From IMG/VR virus record IMGVR_UViG_3300005537_000001, positions 304,055 through 368,054 of that record: 64,000 bases of DNA; one strand, given 5' to 3'. The translations under genes and the position numbers were made by a program. Positions 7,401 to 62,389 of the stretch are shown here, one piece after another; within the stretch, counting starts at the first letter, position 1, and each line of letters begins with the position of its first letter. The notes below the pieces were generated by a model that did not search any database, was not told the origin of the DNA, and was given only the letters and a program-made list of their open reading frames with translations.

Positions 7401-8337
7401 TACCGGTAGCTAGACTTACGCTACCACCACCACCCGCGCTTGACGCACCACCAGCTTGAACTATGAACGATGATCCAGCACCACCTGAAGTTGTAGCAGG
7501 AGTAGAGGCACCGGTAAACGTTATGTTGCCACCATGCGCGTTAGCTCCAGCACCAGGCGTGCCGATTGAAACTAGAAATGCACCTGATGGTTGGTTTGTT
7601 GCTCCACCAGCACCAGTCGTTAGGGTTAAATTGTTGCCAGATACCGTGGACGCGGTGCCGACGCCAGCTTGAATCTGCAGAGTGCCACCACCACCGGATG
7701 GACCAGATAGCGTACCGGTTCCGTTGGATGCACCGATGCTTAGAGTTGCTGTAGATTCACTCCACGTAAAGTCGGAAGTGCCGGTAAGAAGGTTACCAGC
7801 TGAACCATAACCAACGAACGTTGACGCTAGGGTTGCGCCAGTCGAATTTACAGTTACGGCACCAGTCGCTCCGGACACTGAAATATTGGTACCAGCAACG
7901 ATGGATGTTACGCCGGTATTGTTGATTTGAAGTGTACCAGCTCCAGCGGTTGTGGAGATACCAGTACCACTGCCAAGCGAGGTAACCGTGAATGTAGAAC
8001 CATTACCAACTAGAATTTGTCCATTTGTTGGAATGGCTGAAGCGCCGGTACCACCGCTGGCTGGCCCAAGAGTACCCGCAAGAACGATTGCTCCAGTTGT
8101 AGTTGTTGATGGAGTTAATCCGGAAAGGGTTGTCTGGAAGGATGATACGGCGCTTGAAGCTGCCGCAAACTGCTGCCAGCTAGTACCGTTGTAGTAGTTG
8201 TAGAAGTTCGTTGTCGTGTCGTAGTATATGCGACCAGCAACCGTTGTGGCTGGAGCTGATGGAAGACGTTCGATGATGGCGTTTTCAAGCTGCCCGAAAC
8301 CCAATACGTCGAATGTCAAATTACCATTAATCTTCAT
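1441..8337 (-). CDS. Long Gly/Thr/Ala-rich tail fibre / adhesin-like virion protein (2298 aa)
   Basis: Many GVTS..., GT.GQ.L.S.G and L.V..GGTGA fibre repeats; PTDAATKAYVD motif; RVLVKN...NGIY...W.LTRATD domain; SD AGGAG. Confidence 0.8.
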   Translation of the reverse strand: MKINGNLTFDVLGFGQLENAIIERLPSAPATTVAGRIYYDTTTNFYNYYNGTSWQQFAAASSAVSSFQTTLSGLTPSTTTTGAIVLAGTLGPASGGTGASAIPTNGQILVGNGSTFTVTSLGSGTGISTTAGAGTLQINNTGVTSIVAGTNISVSGATGAVTVNSTGATLASTFVGYGSAGNLLTGTSDFTWSESTATLSIGASNGTGTLSGPSGGGGTLQIQAGVGTASTVSGNNLTLTTGAGGATNQPSGAFLVSIGTPGAGANAHGGNITFTGASTPATTSGGAGSSFIVQAGGASSAGGGGSVSLATGISATGTSGSFTVTTGTTAAALALTINPSGALGVGTGNSVGTAGQTLTSAGAGGPPTWTTTATTLTATQVAYGSATNTVTSTPDFTWTETTKTLSIGSSTVDGILTIPGTTGATSPNLNVTGSANTGSGRGGIVIISGGTSSTSVGGQVTVQGGQASGIGQTSGDVVINGGGGGVSGVAGGRVFITGGITSSGSLGGGVIIAGGHAGAGPARGEAVTISGGPGMTSGPGGAVILMGGTSPSGTGGSIILQTGDVSVSTQFTINDSGALGIGSTPSFGTAGQVLTSGGSSTSPPTWAAPAAPLTATFIGYGSAGGVLTGTSDFTWTDTTETLAFGNTSLGGNIVMGSNIALTVKSGPSTDTNPGRALTLTAGAGSTANNTAGGVVNLTAGAAGGTGNGGAVTVAGGAATGTASVGGAVTVAGGAATGTGGTQTGGVLTLQGGNATGSGGNGGGLNLEAGVGGSDGSGGTIQFQTGATSLSTRMTISAAGDVTINTPASGTALTINGISAGTGVNLVSGALGLNGSAGTSGQVLTSAGAGALPTWSNVANSILGTANQINASSATGTVTLSLSSTLVAPGSVTSTGNLTVNGLTFESATTGITAFAGGGQSGATPLTHSYNVVTTVATANDSVVLPASGVGLEISVVNLGAHTLAVFPAGGDQIDGGATGAAVLIPTGGTATYQSVNSGNWYTIDPVIVMSGTGLSVTYSPGETIISNTGVTSFATTLAGITASPVTGAVVLSGTLGVASGGTGATTLTTDGILFGNGTGTVGVTAAGTQFQVLQAGSGGTPAFGAVNLAQSAAVTGLLGLTNGGTNANLTPVAGAPVYSTASALAIGTAGTAGQALISGGTGAPTWQSVSSTLTTNQILEGDGSGMFVANGASFVGTGSFSGVTLHGTVTSPTDAATKAYVDAANNGLSWKTAVTAGTTENFFTLTGTAPTYNNGASGVGATLTNAGTQAALVLDGITLSTGQRVLVKNESNITNSSGVWNGIYTVTNTGSGSTNWVLTRATDNNTPAEMDAAAVFITDGTTQATTGWVQSTQDPITIGTTSILFSQFSGGSVFTFTSGLNTAGNVISVRTDGVTTYIDGLNNVAVDSSATAGQVLTSSGTHGTTATWSAVNLANANAVTGTLAVGNGGTGATTLTTHGVLLGEGTSSIVATAVGATGTVLTGNTGADPTFVALNTLAVTSIAGTANEIAASSSVGSVTLSLPSTVVLPGSLEVTTTAKFDGLTYQSTGMITANGTTQGAAAPLGHEFCVVTATPGNTAVLLPVPAFAGAEVTVVNVGSMGVLVFPASGAAIDGAGANNSISVPAGGTWTGQASTTTQWYSIDPVVVNGIGISVTYNNGNTSISNTGVLSFNGGTTGLTPSSTMAGNVTLGGTLVVSNGGTGATSFTSDGVVYGNGTGALQVTAAGTTGQILVGNTGGAPSWANASTTAVTSFQTSLAGLTPSTATTGAITLAGTLGLASGGTNASLTATAGGLVYGTGTALAVSTAGTTGQIVLSGGTGAPTFLTNSTPIDTDGSGTVPLVVGSSFNIFGTPNEITTTAVSSPAGVTIAIPTAFIAPGSVEVTTTLKIDTNTASAFLFSDANSNVVASASPTNGQLLIGSTGANPVVANIVTSGSGISVTNGAGSITLANTGVTSLAGTANEITASASTGSVTLSVPSAFIAPGSVEVTTTLKVDTNTAKSFVYSDAGNNLVTTSAPTNGQLLIGSTGNVPVAANITTTGAGISVTNGAGSIQLANTGVTSIVAGTGISISGGTGAVTVNNTGVTSFQTSLSGLTPSASTTGAVTLAGILGSTSGGTGVNNSAAVVGTVLVASATGVFTASPVQFTYSSAADAGAKKAYKINHNLNQECVSVVCYDSTVPASFAVNTTSTTSFTIAGSDQTAIFVNGFQFAVVGSTSNDGTWTVSSSVFTGGNTVITVTSAVTTGGALGTIYVGPSMLLPQQVLFVDANNLIVTLTSAINIFVVIEGVPGITPAAHG
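6125..6216. repeat. Perfect 41-bp direct repeat (6125-6165, 6176-6216) inside the fibre gene
   Basis: GTACCAGTTGCAGCTCCACCAGCTACCGTAACGGCACCACC twice at a 51-bp period, encoding GGAVTVAGGAATGT. Confidence 0.9.
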
Positions 8338-8363
8338 TGAAATTGCTCCTTAGCCAAATATGT

Positions 8364-8594
8364 TTACAGTGTTCTGCGAGATGCCGTCGTGAGGGCCTTT
8401 ATCGCAGAATTAAACGAAACGGGTTCAACCACTAGGTTGCCCAAATCATAGTCGTTGACGATTGATTCATCTACTTCGTTAAAGAAGAAGATACCTTTAT
8501 TTCCAATTTTTTGGATAGTGTCAAGACGATAGCCTAGAACTTTTAGCGTTGCAGCAAGAACGATATCCTGCGTCTCTATTGTTTTCTTAGACAT
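8364..8594 (-). CDS. Small conserved phage protein (DUF5659-like)
   Basis: T.DI.LAA.L...GY.L......K..F.F...YD.G.L.VEP pattern; late promoter upstream. Confidence 0.55.
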   Translation of the reverse strand: MSKKTIETQDIVLAATLKVLGYRLDTIQKIGNKGIFFFNEVDESIVNDYDLGNLVVEPVSFNSAIKALTTASRRTL

Positions 8595-41047: not shown

Positions 41048-42296
41048 TCGCGAGCTAGACAGATCTAATCCTCTCTTCGTTGGTAACTTTTTCGACCTAA
41101 AGGGTATGTGGTGGAGGAAGCGGAAGCAGCGTCAGGGGTTGATCATATCGGTTGCCGTCGCGTGGTATCGCATCATGAAGAGCAATCCGGCTGCGGCGGG
41201 GTTTGTCGAGAAAGAAACGCTCATAACCAACCTTACCAATCAAGTCAAGGATGCCAGAGTAATCCTTGATAAATTTTTCAACGTAACGAAGATCGGCTTC
41301 AACTTCAACAATGGTAATAAAAGCCCTTCAACCATAACGCCGAAGCGACTTGGGAAGCGGATGCTAACCGCCATCAAGGAAATTCTCAAGGAAATTTATT
41401 TTTGCCCAGGCGCTCAACCAGTAGACGAAGCGCTTACAAAAAGCTACGTCCACGTGCAGAAAAATGCGAGTCACATTCTAGCTCGACTGAAGGAAGAAAA
41501 TCGTGAGGACCTCATTCCTCCGGTATCCTGGATACTGAGACAGGACTCTCCCATCACCTTTTACTTTAGGGCGAGCGGCGCCTTGCAGCAGCGCGACACG
41601 TCAGTGTGGCCGGTGCGCGCCATCGAGATGTGGCCAGGCTGGCTGCGCAAGGCGTTGTTCGGCACCACTGTAGATATTGAAAACGCGTATTCACAATTTC
41701 TAGTTGAGCATCTTAAGCTAAAATATGAAAACAGCCCGCTGCAGCTTAAGCTGCGGTATCCGGATGTCCTTCGTAGCGACAGCGATAAGCTAAACTTCAG
41801 GCTAGAGATCTTGCAGCTGCTCAAGCTTGAAAACAGCTACGATAACATGAAATACGTAAAGCGCATCTTGATGTCGTTGGCCAATGGTTCAAATGCATCC
41901 GCCGCGCTGATGACGAATGGAAGCGGTATGTCTGAAACCGTGGCGCTCGTCAATGAAGCCAATCCTAAGCTGCTTCCAACTGAACTCGCTGTTCTTGGAA
42001 ACCGGCTTTCCAGCATCGTGAAGCAGTTTAGGGCAGCTCGGCGTGATCTCTGCCTGTACCTCTTGAAGGAAAAACCGACGCGCGCAAATCAAAAGAAAAT
42101 ATTCAAGATGTACATGGCGTGGGAACGGACAGCTCGATACAAGATATGGAATGCAGCTGGACAGTCAGGCTTGCACCTCCACGACGGCGTTGATGGAATC
42201 GTAACGGACAAGTCAGACAGTGAGCTTACCAGCCATATAGCACGACAAACTTCGCTGCGCGTAAGCGTCAGCACACCACTAGCAGAGGCAGCATAA
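41019..42296 (+). CDS. Family-A-like (TV-Pol-type) nucleic acid polymerase, stand-alone
   Basis: Ordered motifs: WP..LR..LF, motif A VDIENAY, motif B VKRILMSLANG, Y..WE, motif C LHLHDG. Confidence 0.55.
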   Translation: MLTFHPLDVDRELDRSNPLFVGNFFDLKGMWWRKRKQRQGLIISVAVAWYRIMKSNPAAAGFVEKETLITNLTNQVKDARVILDKFFNVTKIGFNFNNGNKSPSTITPKRLGKRMLTAIKEILKEIYFCPGAQPVDEALTKSYVHVQKNASHILARLKEENREDLIPPVSWILRQDSPITFYFRASGALQQRDTSVWPVRAIEMWPGWLRKALFGTTVDIENAYSQFLVEHLKLKYENSPLQLKLRYPDVLRSDSDKLNFRLEILQLLKLENSYDNMKYVKRILMSLANGSNASAALMTNGSGMSETVALVNEANPKLLPTELAVLGNRLSSIVKQFRAARRDLCLYLLKEKPTRANQKKIFKMYMAWERTARYKIWNAAGQSGLHLHDGVDGIVTDKSDSELTSHIARQTSLRVSVSTPLAEAA

Positions 42297-42688
42297 TGAT
42301 AACTGTAAAACTTCAAGAGCTTAATAAGAAAAATCTCAATGGGCGCATCTATCCTACAGCCGTAGTAGAAAAAGCGATTGAAAGCGCTAAGGAGCGTATC
42401 GAAAACGGTAATTTTTGGGGAACTCTTGGTGTACCGCAAGGTCCATCAATTCCACTTGACTTGATATCGCATAGAGTGCTTGCGCTAAGAATCGAGGGTG
42501 ACTATTTGGTCGGCGATGTAAAAATTTTAGATACGCCCATGGCTCGAACGTATCAGGAGATAGAAGAAAGTAAGCTATATTCTGTCACGTGGCGCCCGAT
42601 GGGTACAGGAAAGGTAGATAATGATGGTGTTATAACAGATTATAACATCATGGGAATAACAGCAATTCCTGCAACTGACGCAGCTTAA
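42296..42688 (+). CDS. Prohead-protease (gp21) paralogue lacking the catalytic His and Ser
   Basis: Aligns to 49241-49858: KNLNGRIYP, I.L..[IV]SH, G..[KR]IL.TP, GTG.V...G; GELNHP becomes GTLGVP and GVSSRG becomes TWRPMG. Confidence 0.75.
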   Translation: MITVKLQELNKKNLNGRIYPTAVVEKAIESAKERIENGNFWGTLGVPQGPSIPLDLISHRVLALRIEGDYLVGDVKILDTPMARTYQEIEESKLYSVTWRPMGTGKVDNDGVITDYNIMGITAIPATDAA

Positions 42689-42720
42689 AAATATGGGCTA
42701 CCTAGGTAGCCCATATTTTT
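42687..42720. terminator. Bidirectional terminator, perfect 34-bp palindrome
   Basis: AAAAATATGGGCTACCTAGGTAGCCCATATTTTT between convergent genes. Confidence 0.85.
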
Positions 42721-42750: not shown

Positions 42751-42948
42751 TTAATAAACAGGTGACGGTGATTTAGCTGCTATTTCCAAACGCTTGTTGA
42801 TGAATTCAACCGCCAACTCGCGTTCTGCCTGAGACATACCGAGCACGTCATGATAGCTCCATGCTCCTCTAGAAAAGTAAGATATTTCAATCGCCGATCT
42901 TACTATTCCCTTTATCTCGGAACCAAGCTTCATGATGACTCGGTTCAT
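42751..42948 (-). CDS. gp51-like small baseplate/tail assembly chaperone; possibly also the -1 frameshift extension of the upstream gene
   Basis: Y..RG.WSY..VL.MS..ER....EFI.KR motif; own ATG at 42948; frame is open back through the upstream T-TTT-TTC site. Confidence 0.7.
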   Translation of the reverse strand: MNRVIMKLGSEIKGIVRSAIEISYFSRGAWSYHDVLGMSQAERELAVEFINKRLEIAAKSPSPVY

Positions 42949-42971
42949 AGCGTCCAGATCCCCGGCCCTTA

Positions 42972-43793
42972 TTACTCTGTGAAAAAAGACACTGGGTTGA
43001 TTGGTATTTCTACGGCATAGTCGGTGCCACAATCCTTGCACTTACATGTCCATTTCAAATTTGATCCCCAGTCATTGATCTTTTCAATCTTTTCAGCTAT
43101 TCTGTTTACCACCGGTGATGGTATCTTCCTAATCCATTCTTCAATCTTGACTGGATCAGAAATCCATGCAGCCCCCGCGCTGACGGATTCAATAACTCCA
43201 AGCAGCATCATAATCAGATTTCTTTGCTGATCTTCAACAGTTATTTCTTTCTTGTTCTCGTTTGCCTTAATAAGGTCAAGCACCTGCTGGTACTTGTTAG
43301 GGCGCAGCTTAACCACTTGACCGGTTGGTAGGTTGACCGTATATTGCGACGTAATTACGGTTGGGTCAATTATCTTCATGCCGTTGATCAATTCTTCCAC
43401 GTTTGCAACGTATGAATAATCATTGAACGGTTTTATCTTGCCGTTAAACTCACCGCAGCCGTGATGGGCCATGAATTCGTATGACGCCCCATACGTAACG
43501 GTTCTTAGGAAGAGCATTATCGCGTCAACATCCTTCGAAAGCAGCTCAGATGGCTTCTTAACTCCCTTTATGCACGTCATGAACACCGTGTTAACCGCGG
43601 CTCCGCTGAACAGCTGATCTGGGTTCTTCATGTTGATTTCATCCAAGGCCGACATGGGGTAGACGTGTACCTCACCGTCCTTGACGTTTTCATCCAGCTC
43701 ACCGTTGTGGTAAAAAATACCGCGTGAAGGAAGTTGGAAGATTCTGCCTGGAAGCTTAAGCCCCTCAAGCAGTGGGTTTGACTCTGTCGTCAT
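42972..43793 (-). CDS. Baseplate hub assembly chaperone, gp26-like
   Basis: NPL; LPSRG.FY; V.PMSA.DEI; D.DAI...LR..TYG; C-terminal CKDC and terminal P..FF. Confidence 0.8.
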   Translation of the reverse strand: MTTESNPLLEGLKLPGRIFQLPSRGIFYHNGELDENVKDGEVHVYPMSALDEINMKNPDQLFSGAAVNTVFMTCIKGVKKPSELLSKDVDAIMLFLRTVTYGASYEFMAHHGCGEFNGKIKPFNDYSYVANVEELINGMKIIDPTVITSQYTVNLPTGQVVKLRPNKYQQVLDLIKANENKKEITVEDQQRNLIMMLLGVIESVSAGAAWISDPVKIEEWIRKIPSPVVNRIAEKIEKINDWGSNLKWTCKCKDCGTDYAVEIPINPVSFFTE

Positions 43794-43828
43794 CCTGGGC
43801 TCCTATGTTTTGTGAATATCTGATCAGG

Positions 43829-43887: not shown

Positions 43888-46788
43888 ATGGCAAGATTAG
43901 ATCCCTCTCAGCAATCTTTATTTGACGCTCTAACCAAGGCGTGGGGTCGAGGTCCAGGTGATTCCGGACAAGGTGGTGGTTCAGCGTCTATCGGCGTTAC
44001 AGAATTTGTAAAGGCCGTTAAAAATTCCAAAGACAAGCTTGAAAAGCTTTCTACATCGATAGAGAAGCTGCTGGTTGAAAACGGCGATCAAGAGGATGCG
44101 GTGGAAAAGGCAACCGCCGTCCTAATCAAATCAACCCAATCATTTGGCGATCTTGACGCCGAGGTGCGAGAGCTACTTGGCAAGAGCCTACCGCAGGCGC
44201 GCGCGTATATCGAGAGCGTTTCACGGGCCAGCAAGGATCTTACTACCGGTCTTGGAAAAACAATCCGCAACCAATCGTTATTTGGTGCCGCGCTTCTAGA
44301 AAGTCACGCTGAGGTACAGCGCGGCACGCTAGCATATTCAAACATGCTTGGTAACATGTATGATGCAGCAAATGGTCTAAGCGAAGGTCTTCTGCGTCAG
44401 GCAAACTTGTGGGATGAAAATTCGAATTCGATAAGAAAAAATCTTGATCCACAGGATTTTGCTAGACTTCACGTTGCGATTGGTCAAGCTCAAACTGCCG
44501 TAGTTGAAAATTTGGGCGGCATCGAGGGTATGGGAAAACTATCAGCCCTCTCGGCGCTTAGTCAAGAACAATTCATCAATACTACCAGCGCGAACAGCGA
44601 GGCCGGTAAAAAGCTTCAATCGCAGCTGATCGCAGCGGCCCTTCAGCTTGAAGCGCTTGGGCAACATTTGGAGATACCTGGTGTTGGCGGTGCTACTGAA
44701 AAGGTCACGCTAACTCAGCATGGGCAAGTTAATCAAGCTGCCATAGATGCTCTGCAGGGAGATGCTGGTAAGCTGCAGGCGCTGACCCAAGCTCTTCTCA
44801 AGAATGTAGCTGAAAACAACGCCGCAAGCAGGAAATTCGCTGAAATAGCAAAAAATTCAAGCACGCTCGTAGGTGGTTTACTTTCTCACATAACAAGCAT
44901 CGGATCCCATTTAACTGGTTTAGAAGTTGCTGCTGAATTTGCAAAGCGTGGACTATTCTTGCTTGGCGATACCGCGACAATTAAGAAATCTTTCGACCTG
45001 ATGAAAGAAGGAGTGATGGGGGCGGTCAAGCAGATCGCCGACTTCAACAATGCCGGCGTCCCAGCTTCGTTCAAAAATGTTACGCTGGAATCATTCAAGC
45101 TGGGTATGTCCTTCTCAGAAACCGTTGAGTTCATGCAACAAAACAAACGGCAGATCGCGCTGTTCGGTGGTAGCTTTGACAGCTTGACCGATAACTATAA
45201 GGCAACCTTCCAAAAATTTGGCATAACGATGAAGCAGGGCGCTGAGGTAGTTGGCCCAGCATTTGAAGCTGCCATCGCCACCGGGATAAATGTCAAGAGC
45301 GGTGATCAAGTTAACAAGTTTACGGATTCACTACTTTCATCATTTAGCGATCTGCGCGGTGCCGTCAACGTTACGGCTGGAGAATACGCTAAGCAGACAG
45401 CCGCCCTCATCGCCTCATCGGAAGTTCAAGGCAACATCTTGGGCTTGGATAAAGAAGCATCAATCCAGCGCGTCAAGGATATCTTTCAACAGCAAAAATA
45501 CTATGTGTCTCAGGGGTTATCCCTGGAGGCAGCTAACGATCTTATCAAGGCCCAAAACGCTCAGAAGAATGAAGCTGTAAAGGATCAACTTGCCAATGCT
45601 GCAAAGTTGGCTCTCGGCGCGCAAATCGCCGGACTCAACGGTCAACAGGTAGCCCAGATACAAAGACTGTATCTCAAGGGCGCCGCTAGAACTAAGGAAG
45701 AAAATGTCCAGTTTGATAAGCTGAAACAGCAAAGAGCCGCGGGGTTAGCTGGTAGAACCGCGCGGGCCAACGCTACCGGTGATATTGGTACAATTCTCGG
45801 CACTCAAGTTGGAAATCAATTTGTAGAAAATCTCACTGGTTCGGCCGCCGCCGGTCAGCAGGCAGCCAACACTGAGGCTGCATCGGCTAAAGCTGGAAAT
45901 CAACTCACGGATGATCAGCTAGCTCAGGCTGCTGCAGCAGCAAAAGGCAGCGAGTCTATCGCTGGATTAGGTAACGTTGCTAATACCTTAACATCTGTAT
46001 TTTCGAATCCCCTAACCAAGTCAATATTTGGCGCTACCGGTGGCCTGATTGGTCTCGCGCTTCAATCGCTGTTAACAGCTCGTTCCCTTGGACAAATCGG
46101 TGGAAGCTTTGGCAACCTCGGTGGTCTATTCAAGAAGCTGTTCGGTGGAGGTGCGGCTACAGCTGCGGTAGAAGGAGCTGAAAAGGTTGTTGAATCATCT
46201 GGCGCCAAGGCGGCAGAAAAGGTAGCTGAAAAAGGTGGACTAAAGGTCGCCGAGAAGATCGGTGCAAAAACCATCGGTAAATCCCTCCTAAAAGCTATCC
46301 CAGGTATTGGTTTGATCGCCGCCCTTGGCTTCGGCGCCCAGAGAGCCTTCGGCGGAGATTTCAAGGGAGCAGGTTTGGAAGTCGCTTCGGGTGCCGCGAG
46401 CCTTATTCCAGGAGTCGGCACCGCAGCATCTCTAGCTATTGACGCTGGTATAGCAGGTCGAGACTTCGTTAACGCGAGTGAGGCAGCTGGCAAACCTCCA
46501 ATCCCTGGTCAGCCTGGCGCAGGTGAGACTGCAGTAAATACTACAGGTACGACTGGTGAAGCATCTCCAACCGATAAATCATGGGTTGTTCAGGATCCTA
46601 CGTCTCATGATTATTTGAGCGCGATCGCCGACAGCATGATTCAAGCCGTAAAGCTTCTTCAGATGATATCCGATAACGGTAATCCTGAAGCTAGCAACGT
46701 GGTCGTAGAGCGGCTTAAGGCTGGTGGCGTCAAGAATATACCAACCGCTACCTCATATACGACTGGCAGGCAGATGGCTGCAGCTTAA
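43888..46788 (+). CDS. Tape-measure-like protein (966 aa)
   Basis: Ala/Gly/Gln-rich and helical; C-terminal K.IPG.G...G..R...GD..GA.L...G.AS.IPG.GT motif; next to the gp26-like chaperone. Confidence 0.65.
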   Translation: MARLDPSQQSLFDALTKAWGRGPGDSGQGGGSASIGVTEFVKAVKNSKDKLEKLSTSIEKLLVENGDQEDAVEKATAVLIKSTQSFGDLDAEVRELLGKSLPQARAYIESVSRASKDLTTGLGKTIRNQSLFGAALLESHAEVQRGTLAYSNMLGNMYDAANGLSEGLLRQANLWDENSNSIRKNLDPQDFARLHVAIGQAQTAVVENLGGIEGMGKLSALSALSQEQFINTTSANSEAGKKLQSQLIAAALQLEALGQHLEIPGVGGATEKVTLTQHGQVNQAAIDALQGDAGKLQALTQALLKNVAENNAASRKFAEIAKNSSTLVGGLLSHITSIGSHLTGLEVAAEFAKRGLFLLGDTATIKKSFDLMKEGVMGAVKQIADFNNAGVPASFKNVTLESFKLGMSFSETVEFMQQNKRQIALFGGSFDSLTDNYKATFQKFGITMKQGAEVVGPAFEAAIATGINVKSGDQVNKFTDSLLSSFSDLRGAVNVTAGEYAKQTAALIASSEVQGNILGLDKEASIQRVKDIFQQQKYYVSQGLSLEAANDLIKAQNAQKNEAVKDQLANAAKLALGAQIAGLNGQQVAQIQRLYLKGAARTKEENVQFDKLKQQRAAGLAGRTARANATGDIGTILGTQVGNQFVENLTGSAAAGQQAANTEAASAKAGNQLTDDQLAQAAAAAKGSESIAGLGNVANTLTSVFSNPLTKSIFGATGGLIGLALQSLLTARSLGQIGGSFGNLGGLFKKLFGGGAATAAVEGAEKVVESSGAKAAEKVAEKGGLKVAEKIGAKTIGKSLLKAIPGIGLIAALGFGAQRAFGGDFKGAGLEVASGAASLIPGVGTAASLAIDAGIAGRDFVNASEAAGKPPIPGQPGAGETAVNTTGTTGEASPTDKSWVVQDPTSHDYLSAIADSMIQAVKLLQMISDNGNPEASNVVVERLKAGGVKNIPTATSYTTGRQMAAA

Positions 46789-46813: not shown

Positions 46814-48448
46814 ATGGCATCTTGGGTAGATTATTGGCGAATCGTCACTCCCGCGTCGCGCAAGGCACAATATCAAAATCCTAACATCAACCTAGATGAT
46901 GGTATGGATCTCAATACAGCTGGGTACGCTTCATTCTCCACCGTAGCTTGGTTCTCGAACCTTCTCAAGGGAGCCACGGCCCGCCTGCAGCGCTACAAGC
47001 AGTACGATGCCATGGATTACGGTGACGTTGGTAGGGCCTTAGACATTATTTCTGAAGAACTTTCTAACGAGGACAAGCGCACCGGATTGCCGTTCATCAT
47101 TGATTATCAGACAGAAGAAAATCAACAGATTTCTGAAACTACGGTAACGACAGTTCGTGCCGCCCTGCGCCATTGGTCAAAATTTCACTCACTTGAAAAG
47201 CGCGTGTTTAACGTGGCGCGAGTGCTGTGCAAGTATGGTGATTGTTTTTTCCGCAAAACATCAGATACAAAGAAATGGGAATACGTAGATCCAACCCGCG
47301 TGATAGGTATTGAAATTAACGCTGAGGGTGAAAAGAAAGCATATCACATTCGTCCCTCCAGCTTCTCGAACTCAGTTGCCAGCGCCAAGGGAACAGCAAA
47401 GGGCGTAAGCTCATCGATGGAGTCAGTCGAAATTTCTCCAGCTTCAGCTATAATCCACTTCACGCTGTCGGACGACATGGGCGAGAGCGCGCCGTTTGGA
47501 TTGTCAATTCTTCAGGCAGCGTTTAAGGATTTCCAAAAGCTGACGATGCTGGAAGATGCGGCAATTATCTACCGCATAGTGAGAGCTCCAGAGCGCCGAG
47601 TATTCTACATTGACGTAGGCAACATGCCGCCGCAGCGCGTTAAGCAGTACATTGAGCAGGTGCGAAACGACATTAGGCAAAAGCGCCAGCCCAATACCGC
47701 CAACGCGAATCAAACTGATTCTCAGTACAACGCCGAAAGCATTCAAGAAGATTATTTCTTCCCAACGACCGCGAGTGGTCGCGGTAGCCGCGTTGAAACC
47801 CTCCCCGGCGGTGCAACGTGGGAAATTCCAGAGCTTGATTACTTCCTCAAGAAGGTGTTTAGAGCTCTCCGAGTACCTTCGTCGTACATGATTGGACAGG
47901 AGGCAGCCCCGCCGGGTGCGCAGTTCAACGACGGAAAGGTTGGCGTCGCTTACATGGAAGAGCGCATCTTCGCGAACTTCGTAATTCGCCTGCAGCAGTG
48001 CGTTGAGACAACCTTCGATGAGCAGTTTAAGACGTATCTCAAGGTAACTGGGATCAGCGTTGACCCTGAACTTTTCAAGCTTACGCTACCAGAACCACAG
48101 AACTTCGCTCTGTATCGTCAAGCCGCGCTTGACACCGATCTCATCGCGTCGTTCAAGGCGATTGAGGAAACCGGTTATCTTTCCAAGAGAATGATGATTG
48201 AGCGCTTCCTCGGACTTACCAAGGATGACATCGCGGCAAATGAGGTACAGATTAGACAGGAACGTGGCATCAAGGATGGTCTAAACATAGATGTCATACA
48301 GCAGATCTATGACCCAGCCGTTTATGAAAATCGCGACAAGCTTAAGGTAGATGATTCCGGTGAAGCCCCGCCTCCAGAGGCTGGCGGTGAAGAGACACCA
48401 GCTCCAGAAGCCGGAGGCGGTGAAACTCCAGAGACACCAGCAGCTTAA
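46814..48448 (+). CDS. Portal vertex protein gp20
   Basis: RY.QYD.MD; PFG.SIL; LEDA.IIYRI.RAPERRVFYIDVGNMPP; EDYFFP; GRGSRVETLPGG; ALRVPSSY. Confidence 0.95.
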   Translation: MASWVDYWRIVTPASRKAQYQNPNINLDDGMDLNTAGYASFSTVAWFSNLLKGATARLQRYKQYDAMDYGDVGRALDIISEELSNEDKRTGLPFIIDYQTEENQQISETTVTTVRAALRHWSKFHSLEKRVFNVARVLCKYGDCFFRKTSDTKKWEYVDPTRVIGIEINAEGEKKAYHIRPSSFSNSVASAKGTAKGVSSSMESVEISPASAIIHFTLSDDMGESAPFGLSILQAAFKDFQKLTMLEDAAIIYRIVRAPERRVFYIDVGNMPPQRVKQYIEQVRNDIRQKRQPNTANANQTDSQYNAESIQEDYFFPTTASGRGSRVETLPGGATWEIPELDYFLKKVFRALRVPSSYMIGQEAAPPGAQFNDGKVGVAYMEERIFANFVIRLQQCVETTFDEQFKTYLKVTGISVDPELFKLTLPEPQNFALYRQAALDTDLIASFKAIEETGYLSKRMMIERFLGLTKDDIAANEVQIRQERGIKDGLNIDVIQQIYDPAVYENRDKLKVDDSGEAPPPEAGGEETPAPEAGGGETPETPAA

Positions 48449-49197: not shown

Positions 49198-49240
49198 ATC
49201 TGTGAATTCAATGTGTTCAGGTTATCTGACGGGAGACTCT

Positions 49241-49858
49241 ATGTCAAAGCTTATTCCTCTGTATGAGTATTTCAACCCAGTTGAAGCTCAATTGGTTGAG
49301 TCTCGGGACGCGCAGAAGAATCTTTATCTAGCTGGTAGAATGATGGCGGGTGAGGCAAAGAACCTCAACAACCGCAGCTATCCAGTTACCGAAATTGCTA
49401 AGGCGGTTGGTCTCATCAACCAACGAATTAAGGAAGGTGCCTTCATCGCTGGTGAGCTGAATCACCCAGACAACCTTTCAATCGATCTAAAGAATGTTTC
49501 ACACATCATCATCGAAGCATGGATGGATGGAAACAACGCCGTCGGTAAGTGCAGAATTTTGAACACCCCATCTGGACAAATAGTTCAGAGCCTCATTGAG
49601 GGTGGAATGAAGCTTGGAGTTTCTTCGCGTGGAACTGGAAACGTAAACCACAACGGCATAGTTGAGGATTTTTCGTTCGTAACGCTCGACATCGTAGCCC
49701 AACCATCCGGTCCAGGCTGCTACCCAGATGTAGTTCGTGAAGGTTTGGAACAGCCAAAGATTCGCACCCTCGCCGAAATGGCGGTGGAAGATGTCAAGGC
49801 GCAAAAATTCTTGACGCGTGAAGTGTTCAAGTTCATCGCATCACTGACGAAGAAGTAA
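49241..49858 (+). CDS. Prohead core protease gp21
   Basis: N.N.R.YP, GELNHP (His), VSH.I, IL.TP.G, LGVSSRG.G (Ser), D.VA.PS; ATG 49241 has a GGGAG SD. Confidence 0.93.
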   Translation: MSKLIPLYEYFNPVEAQLVESRDAQKNLYLAGRMMAGEAKNLNNRSYPVTEIAKAVGLINQRIKEGAFIAGELNHPDNLSIDLKNVSHIIIEAWMDGNNAVGKCRILNTPSGQIVQSLIEGGMKLGVSSRGTGNVNHNGIVEDFSFVTLDIVAQPSGPGCYPDVVREGLEQPKIRTLAEMAVEDVKAQKFLTREVFKFIASLTKK

Positions 49859-61529: not shown

Positions 61530-62389
61530 TGAAGCTTGTAGCTGAACTTTCTAGGTTGATTCCACGCGGCCTCCTGCAGGAGGCCGATTTGTCTGGTGAG
61601 AGGGATTCTGCTGGAAAATTCACGAGAGTTGCGCGCGGCAGGCTTATTGGAAGGTTTGCTCAAGGATTTAGCCTACAGCAAATTCACAGCATGATGAAGG
61701 TTAAGAAATTAGATAGCGCGGAGCAAGATGACATCTATGACGAGATTCTAGCTGAAAAGGATGTCGTCATTAAGCGCGCGCTGCACTACCTGAAGGATGA
61801 TGATGTCGCGGCGCTAAAGCAGCTGATATTTTACGCTAAAAAGTTTGGGCATTATTACCCAGAATTCAAGGCGATAGAAAAGAGCATGGGAGTACAAGAA
61901 GGTTCCTCGCAGCGCGCGTTCTCAGCTGGATATGGTGACGATGAAAACATTCAATTTGTAAATCGACGCCGTGGAAAGAAGGTTGTAAAGAGCGTCATCG
62001 TGAAGGAAGAGAAGCTCACCTTTACCGCGCAGGAACTAACGCTAGATAGCCTACGCAGTCAAGGAGATTTGGTGGTATTAGTAATGAGCGATTTAGATAT
62101 TGGTGACTATTACGGCATTTCCGTAATATTTAGGCGCAATGGTAAAATTGAATCCTCGATTGGAGATGCTGCTGCAAAGGCTGAATGGAAGAAATACAAA
62201 AATGAAATTATCAAAACAGCACTCGATTTTCTGCACATTGGCAACAAAGAAAAGCTTCTCAAGGACATCCTAACCGATTACAAAGACGATCTTATCTATC
62301 TTGTAAAAGCGCTCATAAACCTTTCGCGAAAACAAGGTTTTGACTACCCTGAATTCAAGGCAATTGAGAAGAGTTTAAAAGCAAAGTAA
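61526..62389 (+). CDS. Multi-segment protein with two YPEFKAIEKS repeat domains
   Basis: ATGA-coupled to the peptidase; GHYYPEFKAIEKSM and GFDYPEFKAIEKSL; LQE and VQE junctions. Confidence 0.7.
   Translation: MMKLVAELSRLIPRGLLQEADLSGERDSAGKFTRVARGRLIGRFAQGFSLQQIHSMMKVKKLDSAEQDDIYDEILAEKDVVIKRALHYLKDDDVAALKQLIFYAKKFGHYYPEFKAIEKSMGVQEGSSQRAFSAGYGDDENIQFVNRRRGKKVVKSVIVKEEKLTFTAQELTLDSLRSQGDLVVLVMSDLDIGDYYGISVIFRRNGKIESSIGDAAAKAEWKKYKNEIIKTALDFLHIGNKEKLLKDILTDYKDDLIYLVKALINLSRKQGFDYPEFKAIEKSLKAK

What the first reader, a model, noticed from the sequence alone, without database searches (positions are those of the whole stretch)
42751..43000. Probable programmed -1 frameshift joining gp26-like and gp51-like ORFs (lambda G/GT-style)
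Seen: on the minus strand, GTG TCT TTT TTC ACA GAG TAA contains the slippery heptamer T-TTT-TTC (42987-42981), two codons before the stop. The -1 frame (TTT TTT CAC AGA GTA...) is open and continues into the 42948-42751 ORF. Established: tail assembly chaperones beside tape-measure genes commonly use -1 frameshifts. Inference: this gp26/gp51-like pair works as G/GT, although here the tape-measure-like gene is divergently transcribed.
Basis: partly seen in the sequence, partly recalled or inferred. Interest (0 to 1): 0.6.

Follow-up and report, generated by a model that had tools for sequence, protein, structure and literature searches.

The report
Frameshift in jumbo-phage hub chaperone gene
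A soil jumbo phage very probably makes a short and a long version of one tail-baseplate assembly protein by letting some ribosomes slip back one base, so one gene does what phage T4 does with two genes (26 and 51).

Summary
On the minus strand a 273-aa ORF (43793..42972) of the T4 gp26/gp51 family (PF12322) ends ...NPVSFFTE*. It carries an in-phase slippery heptamer, T_TTT_TTC, at 42987..42981. The -1 frame is open from there for 78 codons, to the stop at 42753..42751.

In 77 non-identical homologous loci (identity down to about 21%), the downstream domain always lies in the -1 frame and always overlaps the upstream ORF.
- 69 of the 77 keep a canonical in-phase heptamer.
- The codon before the heptamer ends in T in 74 of 77, although it encodes 8 different amino acids.
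- The 0-frame stop sits at 12 different distances from the heptamer.
- No start codon is conserved.

The added domain is homologous to the C-terminal tail of T4 gp51 (hhalign probability 89%, E 2e-6). T4 gp51 is itself a PF12322 paralogue of gp26. Two metagenomic lineages carry the body and tail fused in frame, each next to a short paralogue. PRF-type genomes have one PF12322 gene; T4 has two.

The likeliest reading is a programmed -1 frameshift giving a gp26-like short form and a gp51-like 347-aa long form, in the style of lambda G/GT. Membership of the tail-assembly-chaperone fold has only weak support (Z 5.5-5.7). No protein or RNA data exist.

The parts
42972..43793 (-). 0-frame ORF of 273 aa: the gp26-like baseplate-hub assembly protein (short form). 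It ends ...NPVSFFTE followed by TAA TAA.
   Evidence: PF12322 T4_baseplate at E 1.2e-10, 41.8 bits against a cut-off of 24.5. PHROG 150 'baseplate hub'. BFVD fold matches to 'baseplate hub assembly protein, T4-like' down to E 2e-20.
43800..43804 (-). Shine-Dalgarno-like AGGAG, 6 nt before the ATG at 43793.
   Evidence: Read directly from the sequence.
42981..42987 (-). Slippery heptamer T_TTT_TTC (U_UUU_UUC) in X_XXY_YYZ phase. It spans the last base of Ser269 and the codons of Phe270 and Phe271.
   Evidence: The site is conserved in phase in 69 of 77 unique homologous loci. The preceding codon ends in T in 74 of 77 while encoding 8 different amino acids.
42972..42974 (-). 0-frame stop TAA, followed by a second in-frame TAA at 42969..42971. 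The -1 frame bypasses both.
   Evidence: In homologues the 0-frame stop lies 7 to 43 nt from the start of the heptamer, at 12 different distances.
42751..42987 (-). -1 frame extension of 78 codons (FF + 76 new residues, HRVIRAGD...SPSPVY) plus stop. It is a Gp51_C-like helical domain.
   Evidence: AlphaFold model with pLDDT 88 and four helices. hhalign against the C-terminal part of the T4 gp51 family gives probability 89%, E 2.3e-6. A profile search finds 189 relatives.
42751..43793 (-). Inferred trans-frame product of 347 aa (residues 1-271 in frame 0, then 76 residues in frame -1): the gp51-like long form.
   Evidence: Built only inside a script. It aligns through the junction with natural in-frame proteins, namely T4-type gp51 and the fusions P0161 and P0265.
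42946..42948 (-). First ATG of the -1 frame (codon 13 after the heptamer). This is the start required by the rival 'independent 65-aa ORF' reading.
   Evidence: There is no convincing Shine-Dalgarno sequence upstream (read). The position of the first start codon is not conserved among homologues.
42687..42720 (.). Palindrome AAAAATATGGGCTACC/TAGGTAGCCCATATTTTT, 30 nt past the extension's stop. It is a likely bidirectional terminator closing the unit.
   Evidence: Read. The consensus scan did not call it, because its loop is shorter than the scan's minimum, so this is inference only.
43888..46788 (+). Divergently transcribed 966-aa ORF, tape-measure-like, followed by the portal gene at 46814..48448.
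   Evidence: No Pfam hit. By ESM-Atlas features, 29 of the 30 nearest named clusters are tape-measure families at score 0.92 (a lead only). The portal is PHROG 213 at E 1e-86. The PA5oct counterpart is a virion protein by MS according to its record.

Best explanation
The gene at 43793..42972 encodes a protein of the T4 gp26/gp51 family of baseplate-hub assembly proteins. Most ribosomes terminate at the TAA and make the 273-aa short form, which is gp26-like (body only). At U_UUU_UUC (42987..42981), a fraction of ribosomes carrying two tRNA-Phe slip back one base. They read past the stop in the -1 frame and add 76 residues, a four-helix tail homologous to the C-terminal tail of T4 gp51. The result is a 347-aa long form that is gp51-like (body plus tail). 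One gene therefore supplies, at a ratio fixed by the frameshift efficiency, the two related assembly factors that T4 encodes as separate paralogous genes.

Shown:
- the site and its phase;
- conservation of the site and the frame in homologues;
- homology of both parts;
- the natural in-frame fusions;
- the copy-number pattern.

Inferred:
- that slippage is ribosomal and actually occurs;
- its efficiency;
- that the two forms act as chaperones for hub or tape-measure assembly, as lambda G and GT do.
For: 1. The site is exact and in phase. Its -1 frame is the longest of the 64 in-phase heptamers in the window.

2. Across 77 unique loci from isolates and metagenomes (identity to the window 83% down to about 21%), the extension is always in the -1 frame and always overlaps the body ORF at the ..FF site. 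69 of 77 have a canonical in-phase heptamer. The preceding codon ends in T in 74 of 77, using 9 T-ending codons for 8 amino acids. The first Phe codon is TTT in 73 of 77, against 56% elsewhere in the same genes.

3. The 0-frame tail varies in length (stop 7-43 nt from the heptamer). The -1 peptide directly after the slip is conserved (FF-x-R/x-h-L...PEEI / ..GD..), including in lineages where the 0 frame stops at once.

4. No start codon is conserved. The first ATG/GTG/TTG in the -1 frame lies anywhere from codon 3 to codon 69, or is absent. RsoM2USA has none before the conserved core. Gene callers start the small ORF at about ten different profile positions.

5. Natural in-frame versions exist. 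P0161 (334 aa) and P0265 (320 aa) are body plus tail in one ORF, each beside a shorter paralogue without the tail. T4 gp51 is PF12322 (residues 1-201, E 4e-52) plus Gp51_C, whereas gp26 is PF12322 alone.

6. The extension family matches the gp51 C-terminal part by hhalign at probability 89%, E 2.3e-6, over 53 columns. Trans-frame products align through the junction with gp51 and with the fusions.

7. Copy number fits. There is one PF12322 gene in this complete 368-kb genome and in RsoM2USA, XacN1, PA5oct and A4, and two in T4.

8. In the separate models, the helix begun by PVSFF in frame 0 (residues 267-271) is continued by a helix at residues 2-8 of the extension.
Against: There is no direct evidence of the long protein. 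No RNA runs are held and no proteomics are available here.

No stimulatory RNA structure was found. The 116-nt fold has z = +1.04, and RNAalifold predicts 0 conserved pairs in the window's clade. From my own knowledge, U_UUU_UUC is not among the most efficient bacterial shift sites, and the host is unknown.

Eight of the 77 loci lack a strict heptamer at the aligned position: T_TTC_TTC in three loci, G_TTT_TTT in two, an out-of-register T run in one, and two where the canonical site is the adjacent A_AAT_TTT. One of the T_TTC_TTC cases, L063, has a canonical T_TTT_TTC one codon upstream.

In 31 of the 77 loci, a start codon lies 3-4 codons after the heptamer. In many close relatives this is an ATG overlapping the TGA stop (GAATGATC). 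Termination-reinitiation could therefore also make a free tail peptide in those phages.
Confidence: 0.85

Rival explanations
1. There are two separate genes. The tail is translated on its own as a small protein (65 aa from the ATG at 42948 in this window), by independent initiation or by termination-reinitiation. The heptamer is merely how the conserved Phe-Phe happens to be encoded.
For: Every GenBank record examined either annotates the small ORF separately or omits it. 31 of the 77 loci have a start codon 3-4 codons after the heptamer, often as an ATGA overlap with the stop. A single in-phase T_TTT_TTY at an FF dipeptide is expected about 16% of the time.
Against: The start position is not conserved, ranging from codon 3 to codon 69 or absent. 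Conserved residues lie upstream of the first start in many lineages, including RsoM2USA, A4, Munch, L061, L097 and L105. In this window the ATGA position reads GTA, and the ATG at 42948 lacks a Shine-Dalgarno sequence. The -1 phase and the overlap back to the heptamer are invariant. The third base of the preceding codon is constrained to T across 8 amino acids. In-frame fusions and gp51 show that the tail is a C-terminal domain of this protein family.
Confidence: 0.08
2. The long form is made by transcriptional slippage. RNA polymerase adds one extra U in the T run, so a subset of mRNAs carries body and tail in one frame.
For: The shift site is always a T run: T6 in 44 loci, T7 or longer in 22, and T9 in RsoM2USA. 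Inserting one base in the transcript gives the same protein as a -1 ribosomal shift. No stimulatory RNA structure for ribosomal shifting was found.
Against: From my own knowledge, a run of six T, as in this window, is short for efficient polymerase slippage. The strict X_XXY_YYZ phase of the run in 69 of 77 loci is a requirement of tRNA re-pairing, not of polymerase slippage. The lineages with T_TTC_TTC keep the -1 arrangement although the run is broken to three T.
Confidence: 0.05
3. It is an artefact or decay product. A once-fused gene was split by a frameshift mutation or by an assembly error in a homopolymer, and the downstream part is no longer expressed.
For: Homopolymer runs are prone to sequencing errors, and the window comes from a metagenome assembly.
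Against: The same arrangement occurs in 77 independent, divergent loci, including finished isolate genomes. The tail remains under clear protein-level conservation. The -1 frame never carries a stop between the heptamer and the end of the domain.
Confidence: 0.02

Closest known systems
Phage lambda G / GT (and HK97 gp13 / gp13-14) tail assembly chaperones, made by programmed -1 frameshifting
   Same: A -1 slip at an in-phase heptamer a few codons before the stop of an assembly-chaperone gene gives a short form and a C-terminally extended form. No strong RNA stimulator is evident. The gene neighbours a tape-measure-like gene. The best PDB fold matches of the body are HK97's chaperone and YqbN.
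   Different: The protein family differs: PF12322 here, against PF06222 and relatives. Profile comparison with the HK97 family is not significant. The gene is divergent from the tape-measure-like gene rather than lying between the tube and tape-measure genes. The body is about twice as long and carries a Cys-rich knuckle. The slippery site is U_UUU_UUC rather than G_GGA_AAG.
Phage T4 gp26 and gp51 (baseplate hub assembly proteins; gp51 is required but absent from the particle, PMC3004832)
   Same: The family and domain logic match. gp26 is the PF12322 body and ends just after ..EFF. gp51 is the PF12322 body plus the Gp51_C tail. The tail is homologous to the -1 extension here, and the junction aligns (DVF|KLLVNPDEI against SFF|HRVIRAGD). 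Both lie next to the hub and tape-measure genes.
   Different: T4 uses two separate, divergently transcribed paralogous genes and has no slippery site (gene 26 reads GAG TTC TTT GAG). The T4 tail is shorter, about 48 aa against 76, and lacks most of the long first helix. T4-type proteins lie on the other side of a 100/99-supported split from all PRF-type genes.
Tandem short and long PF12322 paralogues in two low-GC metagenomic phage contigs (L030, L031)
   Same: The long paralogue carries the same tail in frame, and the short one lacks it. This gives the same two products as proposed here.
   Different: These use two genes and need no frameshift. Both paralogue pairs nest inside the PRF-type clade (98/94 support), which suggests that a frameshifting gene was resolved into two genes there (long branches make this tentative).
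Phage P2 E / E+E' and Mu tail chaperone frameshifts (contractile-tailed phages)
   Same: This is a myovirus context: -1 frameshifting in a small assembly gene beside the tape measure (own knowledge, following Xu, Hendrix and Duda 2004, cited in PMC9024508).
   Different: The protein families are unrelated by sequence, and those genes are co-oriented and immediately upstream of the tape measure. This comparison was not tested here.

Membership tests
PF12322 T4_baseplate (T4 gp26/gp51 family) | The Pfam model matches above its gathering score. | tested here: met
   P0001 scores 41.8 bits against a cut-off of 24.5, E 1.2e-10, covering profile positions 36-218 of 219. All 19 aligned relatives match. 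Six-frame search of the own genome gives 38.3 bits.
PF12322 T4_baseplate (T4 gp26/gp51 family) | Shared fold with annotated T4-like baseplate hub assembly proteins. | tested here: met
   Foldseek against BFVD gives 64 matches at E <= 1e-3. The top matches are named 'Baseplate hub assembly protein, bacteriophage T4-like', with TM 0.76-0.79 and E 2e-20.
Gp51_C (PF28602), the C-terminal tail of T4 gp51 | Sequence-profile similarity of the -1 extension to the gp51 tail. | tested here: met
   hhalign of 56 extensions against the C-terminal part of 92 gp51 homologues gives probability 89%, E 2.3e-6, over 53 columns. The narrower profile A1 against T4 gp51 alone gives E 0.025. The Pfam model itself is not in the local library, so its gathering score could not be applied.
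Programmed -1 ribosomal frameshift site | An X_XXY_YYZ heptamer in the 0-frame phase, with an open -1 frame that overlaps it. | tested here: met
   T_TTT_TTC at 42987..42981, with the -1 frame open for 78 codons.
Programmed -1 ribosomal frameshift site | The heptamer and the relative frame are conserved in homologues, beyond what the protein sequence requires. | tested here: met
   The -1 frame holds in all loci with both parts. 69 of 77 have a canonical site. The preceding codon's third base is T in 74 of 77 across 8 amino acids. TTT is used in 73 of 77, against a 56% background.
Programmed -1 ribosomal frameshift site | A downstream stimulatory stem-loop or pseudoknot, or an upstream Shine-Dalgarno-like element. 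| tested here: not met
   The fold has z = +1.04. RNAalifold on 13 relatives predicts 0 pairs. No AGGAGG is seen upstream. This feature is not obligatory; from my own knowledge, lambda G/GT lacks one.
Programmed -1 ribosomal frameshift site | The trans-frame protein is detected. | not testable with these tools
   Only the source DNA run holds the sequence, and no RNA or proteome is available.
Tail assembly chaperone (lambda G/GT type) | Tail-assembly-chaperone fold or sequence family. | tested here: inconclusive
   A VIA-align search of 48,161 chains ranks YqbN (3klu, Z 5.7, 83 residues) and the HK97 chaperone (2ob9, Z 5.5, 89 residues) first and second. In the second look, only these two and 5ir0 exceed Z 4. 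Foldseek gives 2ob9 a probability of 0.54. However, Z below 8 is within the tool's stated noise range. hhalign against the HK97 family gives E 0.36, and no chaperone Pfam family matches.
Tail assembly chaperone (lambda G/GT type) | The gene lies between the major tail/tube gene and the tape-measure gene, on the same strand. | tested here: not met
   The gene is head-to-head with the tape-measure-like ORF 43888..46788, and a convergent unit lies downstream.
Tail assembly chaperone (lambda G/GT type) | The protein binds the tape measure, and the long form binds the tube protein; both are absent from virions. | not tested
   No complex prediction was run. The only hint is that the PA5oct record marks the neighbouring large protein, but not the hub protein, as found by virion MS. 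T4 gp51 is absent from particles (PMC3004832).

The most novel reading that the evidence does not exclude
PF12322 proteins (T4 gp26/gp51) would be the T4-type counterparts, and distant homologues, of lambda-type tail assembly chaperones. Their original mode of expression would have been a G/GT-like -1 frameshift. That mode survives in a large clade of jumbo phages and was resolved at least twice into separate short and long genes: in T4-like phages as genes 26 and 51, and in the L030/L031 lineages. This would explain why T4 lacks the otherwise near-universal chaperone frameshift, and it would assign a concrete role to gp26 and gp51.
Probability: 0.35. Interest if true: 0.75.

Novelty: new variant of a known kind. 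Interest (0 to 1): 0.62.

Why it matters
Programmed -1 frameshifting in tail assembly chaperone genes is a hallmark of long-tailed phages. [quoted passage not shown]

This finding links the two. A large and diverse group of jumbo myoviruses, including the isolates RsoM2USA, XacN1, Xoo-sp13, Atu_ph07, PA5oct and the Rak2-like phages, carries one gp26/gp51-family gene. A conserved slippery site in that gene would yield both a gp26-like and a gp51-like product.

If confirmed, several things follow.
- It corrects the annotation of dozens of published genomes, where the tail is a 'hypothetical protein' or is missing.
- It gives a natural experiment on why both forms are needed, since one gene with a shift can be compared with two separate genes.
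- It makes the function of gp26 and gp51 testable by analogy with G/GT.

None of the annotated GenBank records examined marks the shift, and six full-text searches found no paper that reports it.

Tried and rejected
DNA similarity and family searches on the locus and the extension:
- A DNA-level search of the locus against phage records gave no match, so the work moved to protein searches.
- Pfam and PHROG scans of the extension gave no hits. Homology to gp51 appeared only by profile-profile comparison.

RNA structure:
- A single-sequence fold and RNAalifold were run to look for a stimulator, and none was found.

Structural searches:
- Foldseek against the PDB for the extension model gave only noise, such as STING at E > 1.
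- A sequence search of the PDB with the family profile, T4 gp51 and T4 gp26 found no solved relatives.
- hhalign of 74 gp26-like sequences against the HK97 chaperone family gave E 0.36, which is not significant, although the same region aligns as in the structural match.

Comparisons with T4 proteins and the neighbouring ORF:
- The idea that the small ORF corresponds to T4 gp25, the gene downstream of gene 26 in T4, was rejected (hhalign E 0.21).
- BLASTP of the 966-aa neighbour against T4 gp29 was not significant. tblastn against phages matched only its Gly-rich segment.

Sequencing runs and literature:
- Only the source soil metagenome holds the sequence, as contigs, and no RNA run does.
- Six full-text literature searches found no report of this frameshift.
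Full report
**1. What is in the sequence.**
On the minus strand, an ORF runs from the ATG at 43793 to the TAA at 42974..42972 (273 aa, P0001). An AGGAG sits 6 nt before the ATG. The ORF ends ...CKDCGTDYAVEIPINPVSFFTE. The last three sense codons before ACA GAG TAA are TCT TTT TTC, so T_TTT_TTC occupies 42987..42981 in exact X_XXY_YYZ phase. Read one base back, the frame (TTT TTT CAC AGA GTA ATA AGG ...) stays open for 78 codons, up to the stop at 42753..42751. About 30 nt further on lies a GC-rich palindrome flanked by A5 and T5 (42720..42687), where a convergent plus-strand unit also ends.

A single in-phase T_TTT_TTY at a Phe-Phe pair is not rare. It occurs at 5 of the 28 FF dipeptides in the window's long ORFs, against about 16% expected from 55% TTT usage and 29.5% third-position T. 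However, among all 64 in-phase X_XXY_YYZ sites in those ORFs, this one has the longest open -1 frame (78 codons; median 11, 90th percentile 29). It is also the only one that leads usefully past the 0-frame stop.

**2. What the two parts are.**
P0001 belongs to PF12322 'T4_baseplate' (41.8 bits against a cut-off of 24.5) and to PHROG 150 'baseplate hub'. Its AlphaFold model (pLDDT 85) matches predicted structures of 'baseplate hub assembly protein, T4-like' from many myoviruses (E down to 2e-20).

The window is the right-hand end of a complete 368,054-bp virus record with terminal repeats, from a soil metagenome. Its relatives by tblastn are jumbo phages: RsoM2USA (43%), Xoo-sp13, XacN1, CM1, Atu_ph07, Phosso, PA5oct, SCTP-2 and the Rak2-like phages A4 and Munch.

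The -1 extension has no Pfam or PHROG match. It folds confidently into four helices (pLDDT 88), with no informative PDB match.

**3. Comparative test of the frameshift.**
I collected 28 loci in a first round (17 IMG/VR loci and 11 isolate loci) and 80 more IMG/VR loci with a family alignment. I located the extension in each with an HMM, independently of any ORF call.

- In every locus that contains both parts, the extension lies in the -1 frame relative to the body. Its open frame reaches back to overlap the body ORF by at least 10 nt, at the conserved (N/D)P..FF end.
- The single apparent exception, L082, has an upstream frame break, and its junction is canonical (AGT TTT TTT ATG TGA).
- After removing duplicates, 77 unique loci remain. 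Of these, 69 have a canonical in-phase heptamer: T_TTT_TTC in 44, T_TTT_TTT in 22 and T_TTT_TTA in 3.
- The codon before the heptamer ends in T in 74 of 77. It is TCT, AGT, ACT, GCT, GTT, CAT, GAT, AAT or GGT, encoding eight different amino acids.
- The first Phe codon is TTT in 73 of 77, against 56% elsewhere in the same genes.
- The 0-frame stop follows at 12 different distances (7-43 nt), with unconserved tails such as TE*, M*, RES*, VQGF*, IRPSSPKTQP* and DLSFSSQTQKK*.
- The extension is always 70-85 codons long.

This is the signature of selection on the nucleotide sequence of a shift site and on the -1 reading frame, not merely on a Phe-Phe pair.

**4. Is the tail translated on its own?**
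This is the main rival. Several observations argue against it.

- The first ATG/GTG/TTG in the -1 frame lies anywhere from codon 3 to codon 69 after the heptamer, and one locus has none. RsoM2USA has no start before the conserved core, and its record annotates nothing there. Atu_ph07's record annotates only a 40-aa remnant.
- A profile search of 1.8 billion representative proteins found 189 relatives. Almost all are small ORFs whose called starts map to about ten different profile positions.
- The residues directly after the slip are conserved upstream of those starts. Examples are FFHRVIRAGD, FFYSAIKSKD, FFRIQLLIAKPEEI, FFRKWLLIAEPEEI and FFRMRLFVLEPEEI. They remain conserved where the 0 frame terminates at once, so the -1 frame is the one under selection.
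- In this window the first ATG (42948) is codon 13 and has no visible Shine-Dalgarno sequence.

Two observations favour the rival.

- In 31 of the 77 loci, including many close relatives of the window, a start codon lies 3-4 codons after the heptamer. It is often an ATG overlapping the TGA stop (GAATGATC), so reinitiation could add a free tail peptide in those phages.
- Three lineages have T_TTC_TTC. This is a weaker site, although the -1 arrangement is kept.

**5. The tail is a bona fide C-terminal domain of this family.**
Two of the 189 profile hits are long proteins: P0161 (334 aa) and P0265 (320 aa). Both are a PF12322 body continuing in frame into the tail. On their contigs, each is preceded by a second, shorter PF12322 gene without the tail.

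More tellingly, T4 gp51 is itself a PF12322 protein (residues 1-201, E 4e-52) followed by about 48 residues that newer Pfam releases call Gp51_C (PF28602). T4 gp26 is PF12322 alone and stops five residues after its own ..EFF.

Profile-profile comparison of 56 extensions with the C-terminal part of 92 gp51 homologues gives probability 89%, E 2.3e-6, over 53 columns. The shared motifs are NPDEI matching PEEI, and Y-x-l-x-x-I-x-x-M-x-P-x-ER-x-x-x-L-x-L-I-E-K matching s-Y-x-x-v-l-x-M-S-x-a-ER-e-x-a-x-e-F-I-n-e-r. An alignment of conceptual trans-frame products with gp51 and with the in-frame fusions runs straight through the junction.

In T4, gene 51 is not downstream of gene 26. It is divergent, heading the 51-27-28-29 operon, and gene 25 follows gene 26. 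The tail is not gp25-like.

**6. Copy number and phylogeny.**
This genome and the complete genomes of RsoM2USA, XacN1, PA5oct and A4 each have one PF12322 gene, while T4 has two.

A maximum-likelihood tree of 38 bodies gives three results.
- It separates all PRF-type genes from T4-type gp26 plus gp51 by a branch with 100/99 support.
- It places both paralogue pairs of L030 and L031 inside the PRF-type clade (98/94). This suggests that there a frameshifting gene was resolved into a short gene and a long gene.
- It leaves the order of events for T4 open. The tree is unrooted, some branches are long, and gp26 monophyly is weak.

**7. Mechanism.**
The most likely mechanism is tandem -1 slippage of two tRNA-Phe on U_UUU_UUC. 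It would give a 347-aa protein (residues 1-271 plus 76 new residues) alongside the 273-aa product.

No stimulatory structure was found. The fold has z = +1.04, and RNAalifold predicts 0 conserved pairs among 13 relatives. The efficiency cannot be predicted.

Transcriptional slippage would give the same protein and cannot be excluded for the T7-T9 lineages. However, the strict codon phase of the run, and its survival as T_TTC_TTC, point to the ribosome. In the separate models, the last helix of the body (PVSFF, residues 267-271) is continued by the first helix of the extension, as expected for one polypeptide.

**8. Is it 'G/GT'?**
In function and logic the resemblance is close. The review PMC3004832 lists T4 gp26 and gp51 as hub assembly chaperones and states that gp51 is required but absent from the particle. 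The gene here sits head-to-head with a 966-aa ORF whose nearest named clusters by language-model features are tape-measure families (29 of 30, score 0.92; a lead only).

Structurally, an exhaustive VIA-align search of 48,161 PDB chains ranks two proteins first and second.
- YqbN (3klu; Z 5.7, rmsd 3.3 over 83 residues).
- The HK97 tail assembly chaperone (2ob9; Z 5.5, rmsd 3.2 over 89 residues).

In the second look, only these two and 5ir0 exceed Z 4, and the next match is at 2.5. Foldseek gives 2ob9 its highest probability, 0.54. YqbN is the skin-prophage counterpart of PBSX XkdN (my recollection), and XkdN is described as the PBSX tail assembly chaperone (PMC9406221).

Two chaperones at the top of an unbiased search is suggestive. 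However, the Z values are in the range the tool calls common, and sequence profiles do not connect the families (E 0.36; no chaperone Pfam hit). The canonical gene position is also not met. I therefore say that it works like G/GT, and I leave membership of that family open.

**9. Novelty and verdict.**
None of the annotated GenBank records examined marks a joined CDS here. The tail is either a separate 'hypothetical protein' or unannotated. Six full-text searches found no paper describing a frameshift in a gp26/gp51-type gene.

The kind of mechanism is well known, whereas the family, the clade-wide conservation in jumbo phages and the link to T4's 26/51 pair appear new. I rate it a new variant of a known kind. 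My confidence that the frameshift is real and functional is about 0.85. The remaining uncertainty comes from the complete lack of protein or RNA evidence.

**10. Procedural notes.**
No alternative genetic code was used. The trans-frame protein was assembled only inside a script for alignment and was not sent to tools that require letter-for-letter translations.

Noticed in passing
window 42296..42688 (+) and 49202..49858 (+): There are two ORFs with head-maturation-protease similarity (PHROG 207). One is a 130-aa partial match (profile 48-151) that ends at the same palindrome as the hub-gene unit. The other is a fuller 218-aa copy in the portal/prohead module. The short one may be a fragment or a diverged paralogue.
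   Followed up: no
window 43888..46788 (+), residues about 785-876: The only part of the 966-aa tape-measure-like protein that matches other phages is a Gly/Ala-rich hydrophobic stretch. It is shared with cyanophage ORFs annotated 'peptidase M15' or 'late control gene D' and with Xanthomonas phage X1. The protein shows no significant similarity to T4 gp29.
   Followed up: partly
L030:1959-2789 and L031:2980-3939: The short PF12322 paralogues that precede the in-frame body+tail genes still carry an in-phase T_TTT_TTA or T_TTT_TTT at their (N/D)F(F/L) end, although no tail follows in the -1 frame. This may be a relic of a former shift site.
   Followed up: partly
L029 (T4) 7803-8429, minus strand: T4 gene 26 also yields two products, by internal initiation (gene 26', annotated at 7803..8090 of the locus). 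Two-isoform expression thus recurs in this family by a different route.
   Followed up: no
L007/L008, L016/L020 and L062/L104: Some lineages have T_TTC_TTC instead of T_TTT_TTC, yet keep the -1 arrangement and a conserved tail. L094 and L095 have G_TTT_TTT, and L080 has the T run one base out of register with an ATGA overlap. These are natural variants for testing how much slipperiness is needed, or cases that rely on reinitiation.
   Followed up: partly
window, long ORFs on both strands: Four other FF dipeptides carry an in-phase T_TTT_TTY, and there are 64 in-phase X_XXY_YYZ sites in all. None has a -1 frame that runs usefully past its stop. The only other case, TTTAAAA at 62374 (+), gives 6 codons.
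   Followed up: yes
PDB 5ir0 (fold match to residues 147-245 of P0001): ORF19 of a Vibrio cholerae PICI-like element, of unknown function, is the third-best fold match (Z 4.0-4.3), after the two tail assembly chaperones. It may itself be chaperone-like.
   Followed up: no
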